Shown: positions 24,495-60,300 of the stretch, one piece after another
Layout: each line of letters opens with the position of its first letter
Position numbering within the stretch: position 1 is the first letter of the stretch
Source of the DNA: Ascidiella aspersa
Taxonomy: Eukaryota
DNA: 64,000 nt
Assembly: GCA_963924565.1 (NCBI GenBank)
Contig: OZ004613.1
Location: 30,318,001-30,382,000 of the forward strand
Direction: 5' to 3'
Program-made: the position numbers and the translations under genes
The notes under the pieces: generated by a model
The model's input: the letters and a program-made list of their open reading frames with translations, nothing else
Told to the model about the DNA's origin: nothing
The model's database searches: none

Positions 24495-37035
<12,541 letters not shown>

Positions 37036-41600: not shown

Positions 41601-44600
41601 AATCAGTCGTTATGATAATGATTAAACAGGTTTTACTTAAGTGAGTTAATTGTCTCAAAAAAACATTCCTTCTGGGCAATTAAAGCAGTCAATTTTTACT
41701 ATTATTATCACTTATTTGCTGTATAATAAATCAAGGGAACATTGTGGTAGAGAGCTACATGCATTATAAACCTTAAGCTTACTAAGAGGCATACAATAGC
41801 AAAATTACCAGGATGTCAAGCTTTATCCCCACTATGTTGGCATTCAAAATGACAGTGTCTTGTTACAATGGTCACCACAATGTCAATTGTTTGTTCACAG
41901 AGGCTTAATGCACAGACAAGAGCATGCCATGAGAACTATATAAATTATAACTAGGGCGATTATTTCTTGTCAAAAAAAGTCAAAATTTTGTCAAAATATA
42001 CATGCTAGGTAAAAATTTGTTAAAATTATTTCAAGTCAAAATTGATTAAAAATGCACATAAATCGTTTACAAAATTAGAAAAATATTACATCAATATTTT
42101 TCCCACGCTGTGTTAACATTAAATGTCACAATGGTCACAACAATGTCAATTGTTTATTCACAGAGGCTCGATGCGAATAGGAAACGACTTCATCCTTTTT
42201 ACGAAGAAGGGCCACGAACTTTGCTGCTTGATGTTGTCTCGAACGTTCCACGACCAGGAAAGTATCGACAGTATTATTGTCCCGATGCCGATCTGGGACA
42301 CTGATACACGACGACCAGTCTATCAAGCTGGAGGAAAAGAAAGGGTATGTACTTGTGGGGCATTTTCTACAAAGTTTTGCACTCATATGTGGGATTTTAA
42401 AAATTGTGGGATTATTTTTGTAAGCTTTTGAATATTTTATTAAAAAAAAGTTTCTTTAAACAAAGACATTCTAGTTATGTGCTAGTACATAGTTTTTATA
42501 AAACATTAAATGCAGATATTTGTGACATAGTCAGAAATAGTGGTATTATTTTAGGAAACTATATAATGATCAAAAAAAGTTACTTATAAATACGCTTGAA
42601 AAGAAAATACATTAAAAAAAACTTACTGTAAATACACTATTTCTTGTAATTTTAAATATGTATTATAATATATTTGATACTATACATTGCCTTGACTATT
42701 CTTTCCATGATGCATAATAAAGGTTTAAAAAAATGTTAATTTTTTTTCACCTTTAGTTTGACACTGAGATGAAGCTTATTTTAAAATACTCGCCATTTAA
42801 ATCAGAGTGGGACATAATGCGACAATTTGACAAGATAAAGGACAGAACAGGTATGACAGTTTAAATAAATGTTCAATATTTAACTGTTGAAAATAAATCC
42901 TATTTTAATTGAAAAAGCAAAATGTCTATTTAAATTTTTATTATTTGAAAAAAACATTTTTTAAATGTTTCTATATCAAAGCCCATACAGAAGTAGGTAT
43001 CATTTTGGACGTTTCGAATAACTCTTTATTCATTTTCAACATCATTTTCAACATGATGTTGAAAATGAATAAAGAGTTATTCGAAACGTCCAAAATGATA
43101 CCTACTTCTGTATGGGCTTTGATATTCTTATTACGTCTTACTACAACCTCCAACCATTATGCTTAAATGTTTCTATTGTGAAAAAACAGCTTACGTTTTA
43201 GGACTGGTTTTTATGTAAACTTTTTCTTCAAATATGATGTGATTGTTTTGTTCCTTGTCATTTTTCAAGGGGCTGTCACTCTATCAATTCTAGCAACATT
43301 ACCTTGTAAAAAGAAAACAATGGAATTTAACTTTTTATTTCCAGGCACCTTAATCATCATCTACAACCTTAAGCTTCTTGACTCGGGTGAACCGGAACTT
43401 GACATCAAAACCGACCCCACGGACATTATGATGTCAGAAATGGACCCGGATGACGACAGGTTTGTCTTAACTTGTGCTTTTAACCACTCTTGAGCAAGAT
43501 TACATTTCAGTCCCTTTTTGCCAAAGATCTATGCAATCACTCAATGAATGTTTTTTCCAAATAAATTTATTTATGTTTGCTCTATGTAAATTAGTTTTTG
43601 TTGTTTTAACAAAAAAAAAAAGAGTTTTGTTTTAATTTGTGCTCAGAAATCATTTTGAAATAAATGTTTTACAAAGGAACCTATTGTAAAAGTTTCTCTT
43701 CAAGCTTAAATTAAAAAAAGTATGATGCTCAAGTCTATTTCAGTATTTTAGGTAATATTTAAGATCTGGGTAAAAAGTGGCTTCACATCATTCTGACCCC
43801 ATTACTTAATATTGTTTCAAATGTAAATCAGTGTGTTGAAAATTGTAGACATTTGCATATCATTAGAATATCTTGTATTAGAATTATATTTGATTAATTT
43901 GGGCAATATTTGTAGAATTTATATACAATGCTTTGCACAAAATGCGCAATATTAACTTAACTTTTGTGTTTATTGCAGCAATTGGCCTGAGCGTGTTTCG
44001 TTCAAAGCTTACGCGTCGATTTTGTACTTGGACCCTCGTATGAAGGTTTATGTTCAGGGGAGAAAAATTAGAACCAAGAGACTTTCTTGCACACTTCATA
44101 AAACAAGGTTAGTTCACTCATGTTTTATTACAGGGGGTGAAATTCGATGTAGGGTTTAATTCCAACTTTTGTGTATTTCAAGTTTATCAAATTAGTTAAC
44201 TAATCACACGTATGCCTTATTTTAGAGAACCAAATGGTAAATAACTGCTTTTGAGCAATTTTGAAAATTAAGCGAAGTTATTTACATTCAGTTCAAAATT
44301 AACAGAAAATGTTCATATTTAATTCTTTGCCTATATTTTCTTTGCAATGTGGTTTCTGATTTGTTCAGCCCACACTTACTATACTATACAAATTAGTATT
44401 TAAACAGAGATCTAGGGTTTATATAGATTTCTATATAGATTAGTATAGTTTTTGAATGTTTGCATTGTTTTGTATATCTTGTCATGTATATTTACCATGT
44501 TTATTTTATTGTTCGTTGCAGAATGTACAAATTCTCATCTTCGAGGTTTAAGAAACGCTCTGAAGAAGAAGTAGCAAAAGCTGACCAAGAATACAGGATA

Positions 44601-47600
44601 GGTGGGTTGTTAAAACAATTATACTGACAATTATTGCCTAAAGATTGGTTCCTAAGTTTTATTTAGATAAGGGCACCAAACTTTTCAGTCTGCGACCCCT
44701 TTTACTTTTATTAAATTTTTCGAGAAGTTTAATAGTTTAAAACAGGGATGCCCAACCTTTTAGCAGAGTGGGCCGTATTGCCACTTTAAAAATTTCAATG
44801 GGCCGCCAAACCTCTCAAATTAAAGGGGTGACGTCATAAGTTATGTCATATCGTGACATCATAAAACAACTTAACTTATAAACATGCAACTTAACTATCA
44901 TAATGCTCTTGGAGAGTGAACTTTTATGCGCGAATATGCAAGTAATCTCGACCTTATTTATTAGTTTTATTATGGCGAAGGGCGAAAATTTGAGTTTTTT
45001 CATTTTTGGGCTGATACATTTCCTTAAAACGGTCCTGATAAAAACACACATTTAGAAAAACACCCATCTTGCTTAGCAATGATGGGTGCACAAAGTTTTT
45101 GATGGATGTTGAAATGCAACATTAGACTCGATTATAGTCTCAAAAAAATATAAGATTATGCTTTTATCAAATACTGCGCGTTTTACACGTTTTGATGATA
45201 GTCGAAACAATTGTTTTTAATAAAGGCTACTGAAAGTGACAATAAGTGGTGGGCCGCACGTAAGTATCAGGCGGGCCGCAGGCATCCCTGGTTTAAAACA
45301 TAACATTTCTTGTTTTCTGCTTTTGGTGTTTGTTATGTGTTTTCTATATATTTTGTTTTGTATTCAATTGTATAGATTTAACACTTTGTATAAAAAATTA
45401 ATACAGACCCACTCGCAACCCCCAGTTTGGGTTGGGAAGCCCATAAATATTCATAATAAATGTCATACTTTCTATTGTTTGCCAACGAGACATATTATCG
45501 TAGTACATGCAGTTAAACTTACTCTGCTGCATTTTAAGTAAGGTATTAATATGGCATTATAAAAATAAGTTAGTGTGGTTTCTCAAAAAAATAATAAAAC
45601 TTTAATGTTGTTAAAAACTTTAAAATTCTGATTTTTTATATTTATATTAATCTTGTAAAATAACTTACACTTAAGATATCCAACAGGTTGTTGAAAATGC
45701 ATAAAGAATGATTCAAAGCTTGATATTCAAATTTGATAATTTATATTAACATGAAAAACATCAATATTCCGATTTACCCAGTTTAAATACTGTTGTAAAG
45801 CAACATTAAAATCTTGACCAATCAACATTTATATTAATATATAGACTGCTGCTACCAGGCATAAAATTAATCAAAAACAGCTTCTCTGGTAATTGTAATT
45901 GTTAAAACGTTTCGGCAACCTATTCAAGTCGCCTTCCTTTCTATGAAAGTTTCATTTTTGCCCCTCTTTTTTTTCATTCATTGTACTACGAGCGTTTAAT
46001 GTCATTCACTCTTAAGAAGGCGACTTGAATGGGTTACGGAAATGTTGGTTAACAATTACAATTACCAGAACAACTGTTTTTGATTAGTTACATAAACGCT
46101 ATAAAAAGCATCAATGTTCTAATTTATCCAGGTTAAATAGTGATTCAGCTTTAGATTAACAAATCAACTTTATATTGGAGCATTCTAATTGGAGGTTGTA
46201 ATTATACATAGGTAGCATTTTGTGAACATTTCAAATAAATTGTTATATGGCTGGAGGTTGTAGTAAGATTTAGTAAGTTTATCAAAGCTCATACAAAATA
46301 GGTGGCATTTTGAAAATAAATAAAGATTTATTTAAAATGTTCAAAATGCTACTTACTTCTGTATGGCCTTTCATATCCTTCGTTTATATTGATGTTGGTG
46401 AAAGCTCTGAAACTTGCGATTTACTTCATTCAGCGGAGAACAAAGCTCGTGAAACTGAGAGCGTGAGTCGCGACCTCGAGCGAAAGTTGAGCATGAAAGC
46501 GAAACCACGAAAGGAAGAACTTGTTCAGCTTCGTGTCGCTCAAGATAAAGCTGTCGGGATGAGAAAAATGTGCGAAGCAAAGATTGACGCAGCTAACTTT
46601 AAGAGGAAGTAAGTGGAAATTTGATATGCAATTGTTTTCACGAATAATAAATTAACTAAATTTTAACTTTCGGTATGTCTGAGGTTGTATTAAGTAATAT
46701 AATCCAAGAACATGATTAATCACCACATTGTAAATTGCTGTTAAATGTAATAACCCTACTTACCAGCAGTTTGTTTTTTTGATTAAGCAAAGTTATCCAT
46801 GGTTGCCTGCCCTTACGAAAGTACTTAATTGTTTTTGCATTTTTAGGATTAACTTTATGCTATGAATAATGGAAGCCTAGGCCTATTCATGTCAAGCCAG
46901 TGTATATTTGCTTGTGCGTTCTCCAAAAGTAAGCAAGCTAACTGTCTTTTTTAACGTTTACAAAAGAGCGCTTAAAGACAAGAAGTCGTTGGACTTTGTG
47001 TTTGGGTTCAACGTTGAGAATCGCAAGTACTACGGGATGTTCATCTACAATTGCAGTCGTCTGATCCGAATGTACGAGCGTGTGGGACCTCAACTCCATG
47101 GTGGAATGTAAGTGCATAAAAAAACTTATGATATAAATTCATGGCCATAAGTCTACTAGAAGAAGCGGTTTACAAACACCTTTTAACAAATTGCTTGTGC
47201 ATATATGATGTATCCAATAAAACAGAGGTGAAAGAATATAGCTTCAAAACAGCTAAATCTTATGTAATTAAAGGCATTATTAAGAAATTGTTTCCATTGA
47301 AACTGATGACAGCTGTTTATATAGTAAAATAAAATAAAATAAAAAAATTTAAAGGCAATATTGTTACAGCAGTAATTTTAATTTTACTTCACCACCAGGA
47401 ACTGCCGAGGCATTGTTGGTGTGGTGAACGTCCCTTACCTTGTGCTTGAACCAACGCACAACAAGCAACACTTTGCAGACAACAAGGAATACAGGCATCT
47501 CCTCAAAGCTATGGGTGAGGAACTGCCCACTAAATAGTAAAATACAAGCATACTAGATAAATTAAACGCCTTGTAATAAATTTAAAACCTGAAAAGTATA

Positions 47601-50600
47601 TTGCTGCAAATACGTAGTTTCGAGTAAATTCTTAGGTGTTCTAAAAAAAAGTTTTACAAAAACTTATCGAAAAGAGTTAAGTTAATTGTTGATAGAAAAA
47701 GTTAAATGGCAGCAGTAATATTAAGTAAGAGTAACGCTTAGACTTTTGCTTTTTGTTGCAAAGTACTGTTTTTTGTTTTTCTGGTCATTCTATATTCTCA
47801 AATGTTAAAAAAATTAAAATATCTATTTATGAACATAACCTTTTTACATTTTATACGACTATTTATTCATAATTTAAAGTCACTCTTTTTGTACATTTTT
47901 CCAGGCGACCACTTGCAGTGTTTCTGGCGTGACTCGAAAGTAGCCGCTCACCCCAAGGGTGTTATTGGGTTCTGGGAGGGGTTTGGGTACTTAAGCGATG
48001 CTTGGGGCGACCCCCCTTCCGAGGAATACAAGTACGTAAGGCAACGAGCAATGAAGGTTCCCAAGGTCGTTCAATGTGGTGAGTGGCAGGGCTGGTAAAA
48101 TAAAAATAAAATAAATTAAAAATTATAACTTTTTACATGGCTTATTTTGAAAATAATTGTAAATTGATTAAAGATAATTTTAGTTCAAATTTATTTTTAT
48201 TTTTACTTTTTGCAATTTCACTAATTCTAATTCTGGTCCAATTTGAAAGAGCTGAAAAAAATGTTATTGTTCAATTAAAACAAAAACAAAAACAGCAGTC
48301 TCTGATTTTCGAACCTAATTTCCATTCTAAACAAGTTTTCAAGCTCAGTAAAAACGTGTTTTTTTTAATGGCTGATTTAAAACAACAACATATTGCTCAA
48401 AAATTTTAACCAACAAAGGGGGTTTTCGGACACCCCTAAGATGAAAGTATAAACCTTATATTTTCAGTAAAAATGCATGCAAAAGTATGTTTTATACTAT
48501 TTTTGGGGATTAAATTGCATTTGGGTGAGGTTTAAACACCTTGAATTGCATTTCATTTTTAAAGCGAAAAATTGTCGACATTCGTAACAGTTTTTCTTGC
48601 CTATATCAAAAATATTTTTCTCTTTTTGATTTAGCTTTATTTCTATACAAAAATTGAAATAAACACAACATTAATTGGTTTCTTGGGTTATTTGCATAAA
48701 AAATCCATTACTCACTGTGTTTTTTCAGATGCTTGCCTCAAATGGAGGACGATCCCGTTCCAGTCGGACATGGTTGGCAAGGAGATCCCCGGGAACTGGA
48801 TCTGCTCGATGAACCCGGATCGATCGCGAGCGCGATGTTTGTGTCCGGAGGCATTCCCGCAGATCCAGAGCGGAGAGTTCCAGAAAGAAGTGAAAAGCTC
48901 TGAGCAAAAGAAGAACGAGCTCGAAGATAAAATGGAGAAAATGCAGAAGGAACTCGAGAAAGTATCGGTGAGAAAAAAAATGGGAATTTTAAAGATAAAA
49001 TTTAAAAATATATATATATATATACAACATATTATGTTGTATTGTATCATCTTCAGTTAATGTTTTTAAGTTAGTAGCGTTATAAGAATCATTAACTGAA
49101 GACGATACAAGCTCGTATCGAAACGTCTTAATTGTTGATTTACGCGACCTTTTTGACTTTACAATTCTTTCTTCTTATTGTTGTAATGTACAGACCAGGC
49201 AGTTACAAACATGTTACAGCAAATACATTTAGCTCATGAACTATATTTTGCCATTCTTTTGTAAAGAGTTTTAAGTAGTGACGAGCTGCCGAAAATATAT
49301 AATAACACATTGAAAGCAAAGTTATTTGTTTAGTATCCCTAAAACAACTTTTGCCCGATGAAACATGTGAAAGTTGGAATGCATTACATAAGCACAACTC
49401 TCAAACTCTATAAGAGGGTTTATTTCTATGAAATCCGAAACCATTGGCAGCAGGTTTCTGCTTGTCGATCACTCTTCCGCTGACGCGTATTATTAACAGT
49501 AAAACTCAAAGTTTAAAAACCGAATAAAACCAGGATCAGACATTTTTTAATCATCTGACAGCCTGTATTGTTTTTTTAAACGTTTTGCCTAATCTTTAAA
49601 CGTTTTGCCTAATCTTTAAACGTTTTGCCTAATCTTTACTGCTCTCACATGTTTTTTTTTACTTTTTTAGTATTTTATTATTACGTTGTCACGTATATGT
49701 ATTTTACTTTACTTTTTTTCAGAGAGTTTGAACTGTGACGAGCAGCCGTGATGCGAACCGCAATTTATAATAACACAATAAGAGCAAAGTTAGCATTTAT
49801 TTAATACCTCTAAAAACAACCTTTACCCAACAAAACATGTAAAAGTCGAACTTTTAATTTATTGTTTCAGAGAGTTCAAACAGTGTCGAGCAGTCGTGAT
49901 GCGATCCGCAAGCTCTCCACTCCCACCTCCTCCTCAGGAGCAAGGAGGAGGCGCGTCTTCTCCGGCTCCTCCAGCAACGAGGACTTCTCGGACCCAGAGA
50001 TGCCAACGTCTTCATCTTCCAAACCACAGCAAGTCACTCAGGACTCCCGGATGAGCTCGACCAGCGTCGGATTCAAGGTTATATATTTTCTTTTAATTAG
50101 GTACATTGTGTACGGATCTGTAATGTATAGATTGAAAATAAATGTCAAAAGCCAAGAAGGCCGAGAAAATCGACCTCATCTTGATAGAGACTTTTTAAAC
50201 GCACTTCTTTTATCATCAGTTAATGGGAATATTATACGGTAATGGATATCAATATACTTAGGTACACTATGCAAAGATTTGGAATTCAGCGTAATAATGA
50301 ATTTTAAAGCCAAAAAGGTTGAGTAAATCGACGTCATTTTGAATAAGGCGTTTCGATACGAACTTGTATCATCATCAGCTAATGTTTTTTATTAATTAAA
50401 TTTTGATTTGTTTCATCGCGTTTTGCTAATGAGGCGTGTTTGCTTGATAGCTCATTTAAAAAAGCGATACTCGCATTTTCCCGAGCCGTAAGTTCGAATA
50501 TCACCAAAGAAGAAATGTATATGTCTTGCTGTCGTATTTGTCGTGTCAAGCCTTTCTTGTTTTTAATTTGCAGAAACGCTTTAAATATCATTATTGTTAT

Positions 50601-53600
50601 TTTTTGATTTGTATATGTTTGTATGTTTAACTGCAATTAACCCAAAGACACGCTATGTTCAGGGAAAGGAGGCATATTAAAAAATCCTTAGCTGTCCAGT
50701 TTTATGTTTTTTTAGACTCCTTCATGTATTTTACATCCTGTATTCGTGCCTATTTCCATGTTTGAATCATTTTTTTGTTTTACCAGCGGAGGGCGGTAGA
50801 CGGCACGCAACGGGTTGTCGCCAAAAAAACTGCGTCATTTTCACCGATCAACAACAACTCACATTCCCACAAGAAAAAGATCAAGGTTGGTCTGTTACAA
50901 GTGTTCGTCTGTCTTGACGTTTTGTGGTGAATTAGCTACCACTGCTTCCAAGTTAAAATGTACACTGTCATAACAAAATGCAGAACTCCATAAAATATTG
51001 TGCCTTGCCAATCGGACAGATTATCTGGAAGAAAAATAAAATTTACAAACTAAAGTTCTAAAGCTTTATTGGGGTAAAATAAATTGCTCTATTGGCATCT
51101 GACACATAAATGCGATCTAAACGGACTGTAAACTTATCTTCAAGCAACCACCAATGGGGAGAAGAATCTTGTTGCACACAAGTGCACAGAGTTATATAAT
51201 TTAACAACAAGTAACTTATTATTATTAACATGAAGCATCCTTAATTCGAATGAATACATATAGTTAATGATGAGCTAAAAGAAATATAAGTAGGAACATA
51301 CAACAAAGGCTAACACCTGATAACACAACTACAGCACCAACTAAATAACATTAGGACAGCACTAACACAAATGGCAAGCATGCTGGCACAATGCCACATG
51401 TACAAAATCACTCATGCATATAAAATTAGTCATGCATAAGAATCAGTCAAGCATGAAATAAAAGTAAATGACACATAAAATACAATTAAGGGAAATTACA
51501 GTTAACACGGACTATCTGTTTTAGCCTTGCCCTGCTTGCATGAAAATCCTTAATTAATTTTTAGGGTTAGTCAATTGAAGGCTCCTGGTGTATATGCAAA
51601 CTAACGACATCATTCGGCCAATATTTTACGTGTAGTCGGTTTTGCTTAAAATATAATTTTTTTATTAAGACGACTTCGGTTGACCTTTCCAGTGACGAAG
51701 ATGACCTTGAAAGTCCTTCAAAAAGTAAGTTTAGCATTTTAAATCGAACAAGCAATGATTGATTTTATTACGACCCATTTTAAATTATCATGTTTAAATA
51801 AATTCCCCCCTTTTCTATTATGTGCAGCTGTTCTTAACTCAGGACTTACAAACAGCCGTTTATTATTTTCCACGTGTAGTTCAGTATTTGTTAATATAAA
51901 TTGCGGTCTTTCTCCATACGCAGTTGAGTCTTTCTCCATACGCAGTCGTGTATTTTTCCGTATACAGCCTAGTTTTTTTTCTCGTGCAGTCCAGTATTTT
52001 TCTACATACATTCTAGTCTAGGAATTCCTTATATAGTCGTGTCTTTTCGCGCAGGTGTCAAAAGTGAGATTGGATCAGCTGTCGAAGTTGGTCTCGGTGA
52101 TAAATGGAGGCCGGGTACCATCGTTTCCACCAAGGTCGTTAAAGGTCAACCGACAAAGTACAAGGTCAAGTTCGACCAGCACCCTCAGGTTTCTAATTGT
52201 TTCAAACTAAGTTAAAAAAAAACACAAATATGGTTCCTTATTTTAAATTGGGTTAATAAAGGACGTTAAAAGTTATTTTACAAATTAAATAAGTAACTAT
52301 TGTGCAACCCCTAATTTGTTAAAAAAGTTTAAAATAACCCCCCAGTTTAACTTAACCTTAGATTAAGCTTAACTTTAGGTTTATTTAAATTTAACCGGTA
52401 CTTATTGAATTGTCCTAAGATTTTGAAGCATTAAACCTGTTTTCTCGTTACAGAATATCGATCGATAATCTTTAATTTTAAATTGTCACAGCTCACAGGA
52501 CTTATATTAAATGTGCCCTCCATAACCTTGTATATGTGTTAAATATCGACCTTGTATATTTGTTAAATACCGTGTATATTTGTTGAATATTTGTAGGACC
52601 GCTTCGACAAGTGGGTTGACGAGGGTTCGAGTGAGATCCGATTCATTCCAAACCCTGACCTCGTTTCTAACGGAACGCCGAGTAAACCAAAGAGGGCGAT
52701 GTCGGCTGGTGAGTAGTTCGAACAAGTAGATGTGGACTCGAAACGAGTACCACACATTGCTTTATTTGATTTTAGCAAAATTTCGACTGAGAATTAAGTG
52801 ACTGAATTAAAAAAAATGTTTTTTAAATCTTTATGTAAATTGACGACTCTTTATTTTACTTTTTACGACTCTTTTATTTTATCCGTTTATTTTTTCAACT
52901 AGAAAAATAAATTATTGCAACGCTTTGTTATACATATACATCAGATGGGCTGCGCTTATACATCAGATGGGCTGCGCACCTAAATACAATTCTTCTTTAC
53001 TTTTTTACACAATTTGGGAATATGTAAAAATATTTTTTGAAAAATTCCTGTTTTGTTTTAATTTTTTATGGAATTTTTTGTATTTTAATCTGTTGTAAAA
53101 TACAACGCTTTTGTATTTTCAGACCAACCTTTGAGCAAAGAAAGCCAAAAGCAATTAGAACTCCACGAAAACGCACTTGGAAAACTAAGGTACAACTGGA
53201 ATATATAACTGCGCCAAAACATTTGGGCATTTGCTGTCGCACCTTTCAAACCACGTGATTTAATGTCTGACATTGTTTGCTTTTGTTGAAGGCCAAGACA
53301 TTAAAATGCTGTCTCCTGTAGTCCTAATACTTATGTATTTGTTTGTTTATTTGAAAGTGCGGAAAAGGTAGCGTTTTACAAAGAATTGCTAACCTTTATT
53401 TCAGCCAAATCATCGAAACCTCTGTTAATCTGGTTCAAAGTCTTGTGTATATTTTTACACACCCTTTATATAAAATATGTCCTTATCTTCTGTATGTGTT
53501 TCTGAGCCATGTTAGAAATAGTTGCAAATTTATTGTGTTACCATGCATTGCTGGGGTTTGTGATACAGATTCAAACAAGGTATAAAAAAATTCTTTCTAC

Positions 53601-57334: not shown

Positions 57335-60300
57335 TTAAGCAGCAGCCTCTTGAAGCACAGGATGGCCAGGACTCGGGTTTATTCCATTAATTTCGGCTTT
57401 CATCGGACTTCCTTCAATTTCTTGTTTCATCTTAAAAAAAGTTGATTACCTCCTAAACCATTGCTTTTCATGAAATAAGCTATTGTTGCCAGGCATAATA
57501 TATAACAGAGTGTTGCTCTTCCAGCAGAATATATAATATAATAGTCGATCTATTATATATTCTGCTGGAAGAGCAACACTCTATACATTGCTTTTCATAT
57601 TTAGCACGTGCCTTATACTTTACGAAAGCGCTTTTCTTGTTGCTTGGAATTAAGCCACGATTGTCTATTGAAAATTAGCGACGCAAGCTGTATTTGCTTA
57701 AGATGAAGCTCTTCTGAGTTTTAAAAATCTACATAAATGCCAATACCTACCCATTACAATGCCGATGCAGTTTGTTTGATTTGATGTCAGGAATTTAGGT
57801 AGTATACGTAGGCCAAAGTTTTTGTTAAAATACACACACTGATATTACTAACGACGGTCTTAGTAAAGGCACCTACAAAGCCCTGAAATATTTTTATGAC
57901 TAATCGTAATGAGTTGACATATTTCGCTTAAAGGCCTGAGTTGTTTAATTTTACCTCCACATCTTCAACTCTTTCCTCGGCTTCTTCAAGAAGAATCTGC
58001 TTTTTATCTGGGGTAGGCATCCGAGCCACCGGGGTACCAAGGTTACCCACCAATAGGGACTTTCCCAAAGGGGTGCTCTGCACGCTTGCCCCAGGTATTC
58101 TTCCAGCAACTGCAGTTGGCGTACCTGAAAAAAAAAATTCAATTCATTTCAATTCATTTCAATTCATTTCAATTCATTTCAATTCATTTCAATTCATTTC
58201 AATTCATTTCAATTCATTTCAATTCATTTCAATTCATTTCAATTCATTTCAATTCATTTCAATTCATTTCAATTCATTTCAATTCATTTCAATTCATTTC
58301 AATTCATTTCAATTCATTTCAATTCATTTCAATTCATTTCAATTCATTTCAATTCATTTCAATTCATTTCAATTCATTTCAATTCATTTCAATTCATTTC
58401 AATTGGCCCAAAACCGGTTCATATAGTTCCGTTTGGGTTTTGTTAAAAACTTACTAATTTCAATTCGATCAGATTAGTAACTTTCTAAGAAACTATTGTT
58501 TATGCTTAAGCGTAACTACCACTTCCTGTTCTGCAATAGAATGCAGTTCGTTCTTATTGTTTTTATGCACGCTAACGCCTTCAGCAGAGTGGCGCAGCGG
58601 AAGCGTGCTGGGCCCATAACCCAGAGGTCGATGGATCGAAACCATCCTCTGCTACATACGCTGTAATCGTATAGTGGTTAGTACTTCACGTTGTGGCCGT
58701 GACAACCCAGGTTCGAATCCTGGTTACAGCAGTTCTTTTTTATATTTTTCTGAATTAAAGAAATTTCAATTAAACCCGCGAGTTTATGGTCCCTAAAAAG
58801 GGCGGAGAAAAAATATTCCATGAAAACTTATGAATTTGCCGCAAAACGCTTTACTAATGAGTAGATCATTCTCATTCTTTTAGCTAATGTAAAAAGGGGT
58901 GATTTAAATTCTCTTTGAAATTAATGTCCAGTTATACAGATCAACTACTTGAGCATAAAAATGTATTGGAAAAGTTCAATTAACTTCAATCCAAGTCATT
59001 CATACAGCTTTTCAATCAGCTACAAAGTCTTAACAACTCACCAGACGAGTTTCCATTCCACGCTTGCTTCACTTGATGCTGCCCGTTGTTGGTTCCTGGT
59101 CTCATGCTTGTGTTTCGCGTCCACAAATCATTGCTCATCTTATCTGGCTGGACGTAACTGAGCAGAGATAAACCTTGTTTAAAGTCGACTCATTCTATAA
59201 CACTCCAGAAACTGTCGATTTTAAACCAATTAGAAAATAATATGAATACGGGCCACTGCAGATCACTTGATAAGACAGCCATTTATGCACTGTATTAAAA
59301 TAGTTTGGCTAACTTGGTAATCCTTTAATTATTTACTGAATTTATTCACTGCTTTTGTGATAGGTTTTATTTTATAGACTAGTTTGTTTTTTTGACAGCC
59401 ACCCATACCAATTAAAAGATAAAAAAATATAAAACGTATATTTACAATCCAGGAAAAAAAGGTTATTTTTTGGTTAAGTTAATCAGTTGGGGTAAATGCC
59501 ATGTAATGACTAAAATAATTTAATTTTTTAAGTATTTTTTAATAAGAGAAATGTCGTAAAACGACTATATAGCATTAGGAAATAAACTTTTTATTTTAAA
59601 CGGAAATCACCAGTAAAAAAATCACTGTTAAATTATATGCATTTTAAAAAATGTGGGTTCTAAGATATTTTCCACTGAGCTGTAAGTCTTTATATAAAAT
59701 GGCTTTTAAATAATATTCGTTAAATTGTATAGTAGGCCTGCTTGCTTTATAAAATAAAACATATGTAACAAAATTAAAACCGAAAAACTTAAATCAATTA
59801 TTTTAAAAATTAACTTAGCAGTCAGAGGAATGGCGTGAAATATTTAAATATTCGTTAAATTTTAAAATTTCTACCAGCCGCCTACAAAACACTACTCCCA
59901 AAGAGTCAAACGTAAATAATTCAAAAAAATCAAGTTTTAGTGTAAAGTTTTTACTAACACAATGCCTACTTACACCCAAAAAGAGTCGAACACTAAAACT
60001 AAAAAAAGCTACATTTTTGGTGTAAAGTCAACTTACCCGCTTCACCAGCAAGAAAAACACTTTTAAATGCTAAAACATATATTTAAATTGTTGGTTCTTA
60101 GACGTTTCGACTTACCCGCTTCCGGTTTGCACAAGGCACTCATCGAAGTAGTTGTCAGTGAAGCGTAACATCTGCTGGAGGGCGCTAAGTGCGAGAATGT
60201 CGACCCAGGGATCGAGTTCGATCTCGTGCGTGTAGTTTTTCACCGGGAGCACGTGACTAACAGGAATGCCGATCTTCGTGCTTGCCTGTGTAACGTAACA

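What the first reader, a model, noticed from the sequence alone, without database searches (positions are those of the whole stretch)
49091..49132. Apparently intact minimal hammerhead ribozyme on the sense strand of a MORC2 intron
Seen: the complete CUGAAGA/GAAAC core, stems I and II of 5 bp each, palindromic ACGU helix III and a GUC triplet, 124 nt downstream of the exon-13 (CW finger) donor. Known: minimal type-I hammerheads with GAAACGUH typify Penelope-like elements and metazoan retrozymes, and usually cleave as dimers. Inference: cleavage could cut the pre-mRNA of a transposon-silencing gene (MORC2 works with HUSH in vertebrates) right after the ATPase-CW module. An inverted partial copy at 49042-49062 could pair with the core and mask it, acting as a switch.
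Basis: partly seen in the sequence, partly recalled or inferred. Interest (0 to 1): 0.8.

Follow-up and report, generated by a model that had tools for sequence, protein, structure and literature searches.

The report
Dead Penelope retroelement copy with hammerhead motif
The hammerhead-ribozyme motif in this MORC-gene intron is real, but it is the tail end of an old, truncated copy of a very abundant Penelope-like jumping element, a kind described in 2014, and nothing indicates that it cuts the host gene's RNA.

Summary
At 49091-49132 (+) there is a complete minimal type-I hammerhead: 5-bp helix I, CUGAAGA, one unpaired C, 5-bp helix II with G10.1-C11.1, GAAA, palindromic ACGU and C17. It lies 124 nt into the intron after the zf-CW exon of a MORC-family gene.

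It is not a feature of this locus. It belongs to a dispersed repeat with at least 542 intact-core copies in the genome, on both strands equally. That repeat is the 3'-terminal part of a Penelope-like element (PLE) encoding a reverse transcriptase and a GIY-YIG-like endonuclease. Copies are 5'-truncated, usually inserted as two head-to-head arms, and one arm carries the PLE "tail". Three to four PLE families in this genome carry the motif at the same place, with full covariation of helices I and II and a C3-G8 to U3-A8 swap. These are therefore genuine PLE min-HHRs (Cervera & De la Peña 2014).

The window copy is old (82% identity, 8-nt deletion). It is predicted to be locked in a -30 kcal/mol hairpin, against -3.7 for the ribozyme fold. 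No second sense copy of its family lies within 1.7 kb to form the required dimer. A cDNA-like contig shows the intron spliced out normally. The pre-mRNA switch idea is unsupported.

Earlier notes of this scan had already reported such elements elsewhere in this genome.

The parts
49091..49132 (+). Minimal (helix-III-less) type-I hammerhead motif. Helix I is 49091-49095/49128-49132, the core CUGAAGA is 49096-49102, and the unpaired C is 49103. Helix II is 49104-49108/49115-49119 with loop 49109-49114. GAAA is 49120-49123, the palindromic A-CG-U is 49123-49126, and C17 is 49127. The predicted cut lies between 49127 and 49128.
   Evidence: Sequence read. Features match the published min-HHR consensus (PMC4209133). 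Covariation across PLE families.
49090..49166 (+). Right arm: an old 5'-truncated copy of the 3'-terminal region of a family-A Penelope-like element. It is 82% identical to the young copy L037. An 8-nt deletion just after the hammerhead removes the ATG of the element's ORF. Weak similarity may continue to about 49207.
   Evidence: blastn against L037:1330-1592; genome search.
49042..49065 (-). Inverted scrap of the same element (helix I 5' strand, core and half of helix II, 21/22 identical over 49042-49063 to L037). It is the remnant of the head-to-head second arm, and the rest of that arm is missing. It pairs with 49087-49110.
   Evidence: MFE hairpin of -30.4 kcal/mol with pair probabilities of 0.81-1.0 for 20 of the 24 arm pairs.
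49066..49086 (.). Filler between the two arms. It is shared, at 88% identity across query 53-143 (window 49042-49132), which includes this filler, with one other copy (G000:C9:25240273-25240423) and not with other copies.
   Evidence: Alignment A1.
48728..48966 (+). zf-CW exon of the host MORC-family gene. The donor GT is at 48968-48969, with a 1-nt alignment ambiguity.
   Evidence: Pfam zf-CW E 2.3e-10; spliced contig X3 record 17.
48967..49869 (+). Host intron that holds the element. It is removed normally in a cDNA-like contig.
   Evidence: X3 record 17 joins 48728-48966 directly to 49870-50075.
50261..50385 (-). Second family-A copy in the next intron, antisense to the gene, carrying the PLE tail. 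Its hammerhead is broken (U16.1 to C; core CUGAUGA).
   Evidence: 82% identity to L037.
50100..50228 (-). Third family-A copy, in direct tandem with the second and carrying the tail. Its hammerhead is decayed (77% identity; G10.1 and the GAAA box are lost).

Best explanation
The motif is the hammerhead of a dead, 5'-truncated copy of a Penelope-like retrotransposon (PLE) that landed in a MORC-gene intron. In the active element, the min-HHR sits about 100 nt after the stop codon of the RT/GIY-YIG-type endonuclease ORF and 5-14 nt before the ATG of the next ORF unit, i.e. in the pseudo-LTR. I infer the rest from published PLE biochemistry. Reverse transcription starts internally, 50-85 nt into the ORF, at two alternative sites, which gives copies with or without a 26-30-nt 'tail'. 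Both target strands are primed, which gives two head-to-head arms with variable 5' truncation. The window copy is such an insertion, later eroded: 18% divergence, an 8-nt deletion, and most of the inverted arm lost. It keeps an intact core by descent, as at least 542 other copies do. In the MORC pre-mRNA it is expected to sit in a stable hairpin with the inverted scrap and to be removed with the intron. I expect no appreciable self-cleavage.
For: Shown here:
- Repeat family: 1453 first-look candidates. There are 542 exact core-pattern hits, 280 on + and 262 on -, with 0 for the control. Read depth is about 60,000 over 49060-49243, against about 50 on unique sequence.
- Young copies exist: 27 copies are 100% identical over 61-63 nt.
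- The element encodes PLE-type proteins. L037 carries a 202-aa ORF ending 102 nt before the hammerhead. The upstream ORF in L047/L049 matches RVT_1 (E 1.1e-7, above the cut-off). The nearest Atlas clusters of the C-terminal domain carry GIY-YIG and HTH_animal (score 0.97).
- Other PLE families of this genome (43-54% amino-acid identity) carry a min-HHR at the same place. Across them, 88.6% of cells pair, against 19-44% in slid controls. Nine of 11 pairs change on both sides, including C3-G8 to U3-A8, and 0 of 500 shuffles reach this.
- The ORF ATG lies 5-14 nt after the cut site in all families, with a conserved N-terminus. It is open for at least 230 aa in a tandem copy.
- Of 29 sampled loci, 23 are head-to-head composites, and 22 of those 23 have exactly one tailed arm.
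- The window copy is 82% identical to L037 and carries a deletion.
- The ribozyme fold scores -3.7 kcal/mol against -30.4 for the hairpin, and the helix I pair probability is about 0.
- The intron is spliced out in a cDNA-like contig.

From papers:
- The min-HHR features, and no detectable cleavage by single motifs (PMC4209133).
- The tail, extension of both strands, a protein-assisted hammerhead, and no RNA-seq ends at the hammerhead site (PMC11167929).
Against: - Pfam's own GIY-YIG model did not hit the endonuclease part at E<=0.1. That domain call rests on the Atlas lead and on the visible VYKLxCxCGxxYIGQT...EH motif.
- I found no full-length intact family-A element, so the link is to 5'-truncated or broken copies.
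- No RNA library with raw reads was available. RNA ends at 49127/49128 were therefore not examined, and low-level cleavage cannot be excluded.
- Only three to four independent PLE lineages enter the covariation count. The B and C motifs were picked by a pattern that required at least 4 bp in helix II. That biases helix II, but not helix I or the 3-8 pair.
- The youngest family-A copies carry a C-A mismatch in helix I, so helix I may not be strongly selected.
- The window copy shares its inter-arm filler with one other copy. Simple independent insertion does not explain this.
Confidence: 0.88

Rival explanations
1. One reading: a working self-cleaving ribozyme that cuts the MORC pre-mRNA after the ATPase-CW module, gated by pairing with the inverted partial copy.
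For: The core is intact and on the sense strand. The inverted arm does pair with helix I and the core. PLE hammerheads can cleave when assisted by PLE protein (PMC11167929), and young PLE copies exist in this genome.
Against: The motif is one of at least 542 equivalent copies on both strands. Single min-HHRs are inactive in vitro and dimers are weak. The window has no second sense copy of this family, and the nearby copies are antisense and mutated. The ribozyme fold is 27 kcal/mol less stable than the hairpin. The head-to-head arm is a generic insertion signature. The intron is spliced normally.
Confidence: 0.04
2. A palindromic MITE or foldback DNA transposon whose terminal inverted repeat resembles a hammerhead only by chance. 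This was my own first reading.
For: Many copies look like roughly 230-nt palindromes flanked by target-site duplications. The Rfam hammerhead models do not match.
Against: The arms are 5'-truncated at variable inner positions and have unequal outer ends: 22 of 23 composites have one tailed arm. Longer copies run into an RT/endonuclease ORF. Unrelated PLE families carry the motif with compensatory changes.
Confidence: 0.01
3. A non-LTR retrozyme: a small non-autonomous tandem repeat that is cut by its hammerheads and circularised into circRNA.
For: Two units lie in direct tandem at 50100-50385. A 2026 preprint derives animal retrozymes from PLE pLTRs.
Against: Copies are bounded by variable 5' truncation points and by the PLE tail, not by hammerhead cut sites. 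They are mostly head-to-head, not tandem. They are collinear with the 3' end of a coding PLE. Helix III lacks the loop of canonical retrozyme hammerheads.
Confidence: 0.03
4. The 49042-49111 hairpin is a small-RNA precursor (miRNA-like or hairpin siRNA) formed by the two arms.
For: A stable hairpin of about 30 bp (-30.4 kcal/mol, z -3.7). Weak matches to plant miRNA hairpin models (E 0.11-1.3).
Against: These Rfam scores are 50-120 bits below the gathering thresholds and reflect hairpin shape only. The hairpin is a by-product of a generic insertion architecture. No small-RNA data were available.
Confidence: 0.03

Closest known systems
Minimal hammerheads (min-HHRs) of metazoan Penelope-like elements (Cervera & De la Peña 2014, PMC4209133)
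   Same: The CUGANGA/GAAA/UH core, a short helix I (4-5 bp), an unpaired nucleotide between A9 and 10.1, the G10.1-C11.1 pair, and a palindromic 15.2-16.2 with no loop 3. The motif lies in the pLTR of an RT+endonuclease element. Genomes hold thousands of mostly solitary copies, pairs 100-700 bp apart on opposite strands, and U3-A8 core variants in some families.
   Different: Helix II is 5 bp here, against the 7-8 bp typical of Schistosoma families. The host is an ascidian; Ciona, tunicate, ascidian and urochordate are not mentioned in that paper's main text (its supplements were not searched).
Poseidon PLE of Anolis carolinensis, PAc (Frangieh et al. 2024, PMC11167929)
   Same: The hammerhead lies at the pLTR-ORF junction with the ORF start next to it. 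Genomic copies end inside the start of the ORF at two alternative sites, giving the optional 30-40-bp 'tail'. Both target strands are extended, which fits head-to-head arms.
   Different: In PAc the ORF starts at helix II and the cut site is 26 nt after the ATG. Here the ATG is 5-14 nt after the cut site, and the tail is about 26-30 nt. No biochemistry exists for the ascidian element.
Non-LTR retrozymes of animals (Cervera & de la Peña 2020, PMC7229834; Li et al. 2026 preprint)
   Same: Type-I hammerheads that work as dimers, linked to PLE pLTRs.
   Different: Retrozymes are tandem monomers delimited by hammerhead sites and expressed as circRNAs. These copies are truncated fragments of a coding PLE, mostly inverted pairs.
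Conserved intronic hammerheads of amniotes (De la Peña & Garcia-Robles 2010, cited in PMC4209133)
   Same: A hammerhead on the sense strand of a host intron.
   Different: By my recollection of the field, those are canonical, stable, single-copy motifs conserved at orthologous positions. This one is a helix-III-less motif in a decaying repeat copy with no evidence of locus-level conservation.

Membership tests
PLE min-HHR (Cervera & De la Peña 2014) | Conserved catalytic boxes CUGANGA ... GAAA ... U-H with a cleavable H17 | tested here: met
   CUGAAGA at 49096-49102, GAAA at 49120-49123, U16.1 at 49126 and C17 at 49127.
PLE min-HHR (Cervera & De la Peña 2014) | [quoted passage not shown] | tested here: met
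   C at 49103. It is U in young copies and in families B and C.
PLE min-HHR (Cervera & De la Peña 2014) | G10.1-C11.1 base pair closing helix II | tested here: met
   G49104-C49119. The pair is GC in 6 and GU in 2 of 8 aligned sequences.
PLE min-HHR (Cervera & De la Peña 2014) | Palindromic 15.2-16.2 with no helix III hairpin, so that helix III forms only in a dimer | tested here: met
   A-CG-U at 49123-49126. GAAACGU is invariant in all families.
PLE min-HHR (Cervera & De la Peña 2014) | Consensus families with covariation and compensatory changes | tested here: met
   9 of 11 pairs change on both sides; 88.6% of cells pair, against 19-44% in slid controls; C3-G8 swaps to U3-A8. Only 3-4 lineages enter the count.
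PLE min-HHR (Cervera & De la Peña 2014) | Resides in the flanking repeat (pLTR) of an element encoding RT plus a GIY-YIG endonuclease | tested here: met
   Met for the family. RVT_1 matches at E 1.1e-7. The endonuclease-like ORF ends 102 nt upstream, and Atlas points to GIY-YIG clusters at 0.97, but Pfam's GIY-YIG model itself gave no hit. The window copy holds only the terminal ~77 nt aligned (49090-49166), possibly ~120.
PLE min-HHR (Cervera & De la Peña 2014) | Self-cleavage, as a dimer or with protein assistance | not testable with these tools
   Only contigs were available, with no raw RNA reads. Thermodynamics disfavour the active fold in this copy.
Penelope-like element insertion signature | Optional 30-40-bp 'tail' at the 3' end, variable 5' truncation, and inverted or tandem partial copies | tested here: met
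   3' ends fall at ref 362-371 or 385-393. 22 of 23 head-to-head composites have exactly one tailed arm, and 5' ends range from ref 9 to 308. In the window copy itself the presence of a tail is unclear because of decay.
Rfam Hammerhead_1 (RF00163) and related Rfam hammerhead models | Score at or above the gathering threshold of the covariance model | tested here: not met
   No hammerhead hit even at E<=10 on the window copy, on the genome or on young PLE copies. These helix-III-less motifs are not recovered by the Rfam hammerhead models.
Non-LTR retrozyme | Head-to-tail tandem monomers delimited by hammerhead cut sites, with canonical helix III and loop-loop contacts | tested here: not met
   Copies are bounded by truncation points and the tail, and are mostly head-to-head. 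There is no helix III loop.
MITE / foldback DNA transposon | Fixed terminal inverted repeats with no coding retroelement parent | tested here: not met
   Inner ends vary, outer ends are unequal, and the sequence is continuous with an RT/endonuclease ORF.

The most novel reading that the evidence does not exclude
Sense-oriented PLE hammerhead fragments in host introns might be cut in trans-assisted fashion when the PLE protein is expressed, since the PAc hammerhead is protein-assisted. A burst of PLE activity would then truncate pre-mRNAs that carry such fragments, among them this MORC-family gene. Vertebrate relatives of that gene silence transposons, so this would be a transposon-activity-dependent brake on a silencing factor. 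The hairpin with the inverted scrap would set the threshold.
Probability: 0.02. Interest if true: 0.7.

Novelty: new member of a known kind. Interest (0 to 1): 0.12.

Why it matters
It matters little for host-gene biology. This is one of hundreds of decaying retroelement fragments, and the attractive idea of a ribozyme switch in a transposon-silencing gene has no support.

It is useful as annotation. It shows that this ascidian genome holds several PLE families, some apparently young, each with a min-HHR at the pLTR-ORF junction. The families give a clean natural covariation series, including the U3-A8 core variant. They also show the 'tail' and two-arm insertion signatures that fit the 2024 in-vitro model of PLE integration.

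The case also warns against two errors. Rfam hammerhead models miss this whole class. And head-to-head PLE inserts can easily be mistaken for MITEs or engineered-looking 'masking' hairpins.

Tried and rejected
- **Rfam hammerhead models.** I ran them at gathering and at E<=10 on the window, the genome and young copies. There was no hit. I treat this as a limit of the models, not as evidence against the motif.
- **MITE/foldback reading.** This was my first reading. I rejected it.
- **Pfam on the endonuclease part.** No GIY-YIG hit, so I relied on the Atlas lead and the visible motif.
- **RNA evidence.** No run on record as RNA holds the stretch. The three runs are contigs, which cannot show RNA ends. 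They gave only the spliced exon structure and the repeat depth.
- **Spliced leader.** I looked by eye for a spliced leader at the 5' ends of family-A copies that begin at the acceptor-like site (about a dozen copies). I saw none, but I did not test this systematically.
- **Target-site duplication of the window copy.** I could not define it, because the left arm is mostly lost next to a (TA)n tract.
- I dropped that step and compared against the natural copy L037 by reference instead.
- **Costly searches.** I did not run the large protein searches, because the family scans left nothing open that mattered.
- **Literature on tunicates.** A search for hammerheads or PLEs in ascidians returned nothing specific.
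Full report
**Observation**

The sequence at 49091-49132 (+) reads AUUAA CUGAAGA C GAUAC aagcuc GUAUC GAAA CG U C UUAAU. This is a complete type-I hammerhead core. It has a 5-bp all-A/U helix I and a 5-bp helix II closed by G10.1-C11.1. One unpaired C lies between A9 and G10.1. There is no helix III hairpin; instead there is the palindrome A-CG-U and then C17. The predicted cut lies between 49127 and 49128.

The inverted partial copy is real: arms 49042-49065 and 49087-49110 are 24 nt long and 92% complementary.

The host context also holds. The ORF piece 48683-48967 matches zf-CW (E 2.3e-10), and 46908-47111 matches the Morc6 S5 domain. A cDNA-like contig places exons at 46432-46608, 46967-47107, 47399-47513, 47904-48077, 48728-48966, 49870-50075 and 50785-50882 (X3 record 17). 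The motif therefore lies 124 nt into a roughly 900-nt intron. I did not check the exon number or specific orthology to vertebrate MORC2.

**Rfam**

No hammerhead model matches. This holds at gathering thresholds on the window, at E<=10 on 401 nt around the motif, and for RF00163 on the genome. The same is true for young copies of the element and for a different family. The negative result therefore shows that Rfam's models do not recover helix-III-less hammerheads. It says nothing about whether this copy is degenerate.

**It is a repeat**

The stretch 49042-49166 has more than 1,400 first-look candidates in the 308-Mb genome. The family-specific core pattern occurs 542 times, 280 on + and 262 on -, with 0 for the reversed control. 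Contig depth over 49060-49243 is about 60,000, against about 50 on unique sequence.

Many copies look like palindromes of about 230 nt, so I first read them as MITE-like. Notes from earlier agents of this scan pointed instead to Penelope-type elements in this ascidian genome. I took that as a lead and tested it.

**It is the end of a Penelope-like element**

I sampled copies through their non-hammerhead 3' part. Twenty-seven are 100% identical over 61-63 nt, so the family is young. Longer copies run upstream into coding sequence.

- In L037 a 202-aa ORF (VYKLSCSCGASYIGQTRRNL...EH...PLYLFNT) ends 102 nt before the hammerhead.
- In L047/L049 the ORF just upstream matches RVT_1 (E 1.1e-7, 32.3 bits against a cut-off of 29.6).
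- The nearest ESM-Atlas clusters of the C-terminal domain carry GIY-YIG and HTH_animal (score 0.97, 200 of 256 shared features). Pfam's GIY-YIG model itself did not hit.
- The genome holds at least 151 matches to this domain, some inside open frames of 816-880 aa and some in 2.67-kb tandems.

**Cross-family test of the ribozyme**

I looked just downstream of the endonuclease ORF in other PLE families of the genome, which are 43-54% identical to family A at the protein level. The same 32-nt motif appears there:

| Family | Motif |
|---|---|
| A | CUGAAGA[U]GAUAC...GUAUC GAAACGUC |
| B | CUGAUGA[U]GGCAA...UUGCC GAAACGUU |
| B' | GGCA...UGCU |
| C | UUGAAAA[U]GAAUAA...UUAUUC GAAACGUC |

I aligned 8 sequences without gaps and counted pairs.

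- 88.6% of cells pair, against 19-44% when partners are slid by 1-3 columns.
- 9 of 11 pairs change on both sides.
- 0 of 500 shuffles reach the observed covariation score.
- The tertiary pair C3-G8 is replaced by U3-A8 in family C. This is the variant Cervera & De la Peña described in Schistosoma Cercyon.

Two caveats apply. Only three to four lineages are independent. And my pattern required at least 4 bp in helix II, though it required nothing of helix I or of the 3-8 pair.

All four features that the 2014 paper lists as arguing against chance are present here: consensus families with covariation, a nucleotide between 9 and 10.1, G10.1-C11.1, and a palindromic 15.2-16.2.

**Insertion anatomy**

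In every family an ATG follows the cut site by 5-14 nt and opens an ORF with a conserved hydrophobic N-terminus. In a tandem family-C unit this ORF is open for at least 230 aa. Family-A copies end 50-85 nt into that ORF.

Of 29 sampled loci, 23 are two-arm, head-to-head composites. In 22 of those 23, one arm ends at ref 362-371 and the other at 385-393. So exactly one arm carries an extra 26-30 nt. The 5' ends vary from ref 9 to 308.

This fits the published PLE picture. Reverse transcription starts internally at two adjacent sites just inside the ORF, giving an optional 30-40-bp 'tail' that is described as unique to PLEs. The enzyme also cleaves and extends both target strands (PMC11167929). 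That both-strand priming produces the head-to-head arms is my inference.

Many 5' ends cluster at ref 267-276, directly after a CTTCTCAG acceptor-like site that abuts helix I. The window copy starts there too.

**The window copies**

- Copy 1 (+, 49090-49166) is 82% identical to L037. It has lost 8 nt just after the hammerhead, including the element's ATG.
- Its partner arm survives only as 49042-49063/65, next to a (TA)n tract.
- The filler between the arms is shared with one other copy, on contig 9. I cannot explain this by independent insertion.
- Two more family-A copies lie in the next intron on the minus strand: 50261-50385 (U16.1 to C) and 50100-50228 (decayed).
- Other min-HHRs in the window are at 33817-33850 (-) and a family-C head-to-head pair at 43009-43039 (-) and 43059-43089 (+).

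**Does it cut MORC pre-mRNA?**

Nothing supports this.

- Published single min-HHRs show no detectable cleavage and dimers only low activity. The Anolis PLE hammerhead cut only with PLE protein present, and no RNA-seq ends were found at its site.
- This copy has only a 4-bp intermolecular helix III to offer. No second sense-strand copy of its family lies in the 1.7 kb compared around it (48900-50599).
- In the 116-nt context the ribozyme-competent fold scores -3.7 kcal/mol against -30.4 for the hairpin. The helix I pair probability is about 0 and the helix II probability is 0.0003. Even the isolated 52-mer prefers a non-ribozyme fold (-8.0).
- The 'mask' is the generic second arm of a PLE insert, not a locus-specific device.
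- The intron is removed normally in a cDNA-like contig.

What I could not do is look at RNA ends. No RNA run with raw reads holds the stretch, so low-level cleavage is not excluded.

**Verdict**

The identification as a PLE-type minimal hammerhead is correct and now tied to a coding PLE family. The regulatory interpretation is unsupported.

This is a new instance of a kind known since 2014, and earlier agents of this scan had already reported such elements elsewhere in this genome.

Noticed in passing
window 43009-43039 (-) and 43059-43089 (+): A head-to-head pair of family-C min-HHRs with the U3-A8 core (UUGAAAA[U]GAAUAA..UUAUUC GAAACGU), 20 nt apart. The motif is identical to the one found downstream of intact 816-843-aa PLE ORFs elsewhere in the genome.
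   Followed up: partly
window 33817-33850 (-): Another min-HHR-like motif, CUGAAGA-A-GGCGAUUGAAUAGGUUGCC-GAAACGU, probably from a further PLE family. I did not examine it.
   Followed up: no
window 49066-49086 and G000:C9:25240273-25240423 (L002/L006): The filler between the two inverted arms (AAGTTAGTAGCGTTATAAG...) is shared by the window copy and one copy on contig 9. The flanks outside the element do not align. A whole two-arm composite seems to have been copied as a unit, which simple independent insertion does not explain.
   Followed up: partly
L037:1459-1475 and many family-A copies (ref positions 267-276): The 5' ends of many truncated copies, including the window copy, pile up directly after a CTTCTCAG acceptor-like site that abuts hammerhead helix I. 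This recalls the intron end at helix I in Drosophila virilis Penelope (PMC4209133) and earlier scan notes on spliced-leader-capped copies. I saw no leader in about a dozen copies examined by eye.
   Followed up: partly
L013-L037, youngest family-A copies: The youngest copies (100% identical 3' parts) mostly read ACAUCAA instead of ACAUUAA before the core. This puts a C-A mismatch in the middle of helix I, so the most recently active lineage has a weaker helix I than the old window copy.
   Followed up: no
G000:C9:23488030-23493863: Three PLE endonuclease matches lie 2,671 nt apart on one strand, each in an 816-aa open frame. This looks like an apparently intact tandem array of a family-C-like PLE.
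   Followed up: partly
L013 (G000:C9:23427543-23430605): One composite insert is flanked by an unusually long direct duplication of at least 36 nt (TTATCACAATCCAACAAAATTG.CTGTTAGAACGCT). Other copies have duplications of about 9-13 nt.
   Followed up: no
window 49428-49611 and 50348-50531, 51084-51451: Further very high-copy repeats in the same introns, with contig depth of 1,600 to 40,000 against about 50 on unique sequence. The first also contains a 3 x 20-nt tandem at 49575-49638. None was identified.
   Followed up: no
window 58583-58731: Two tRNA genes lie 5 nt apart on the + strand (Rfam 58.0 and 62.1 bits).
   Followed up: no
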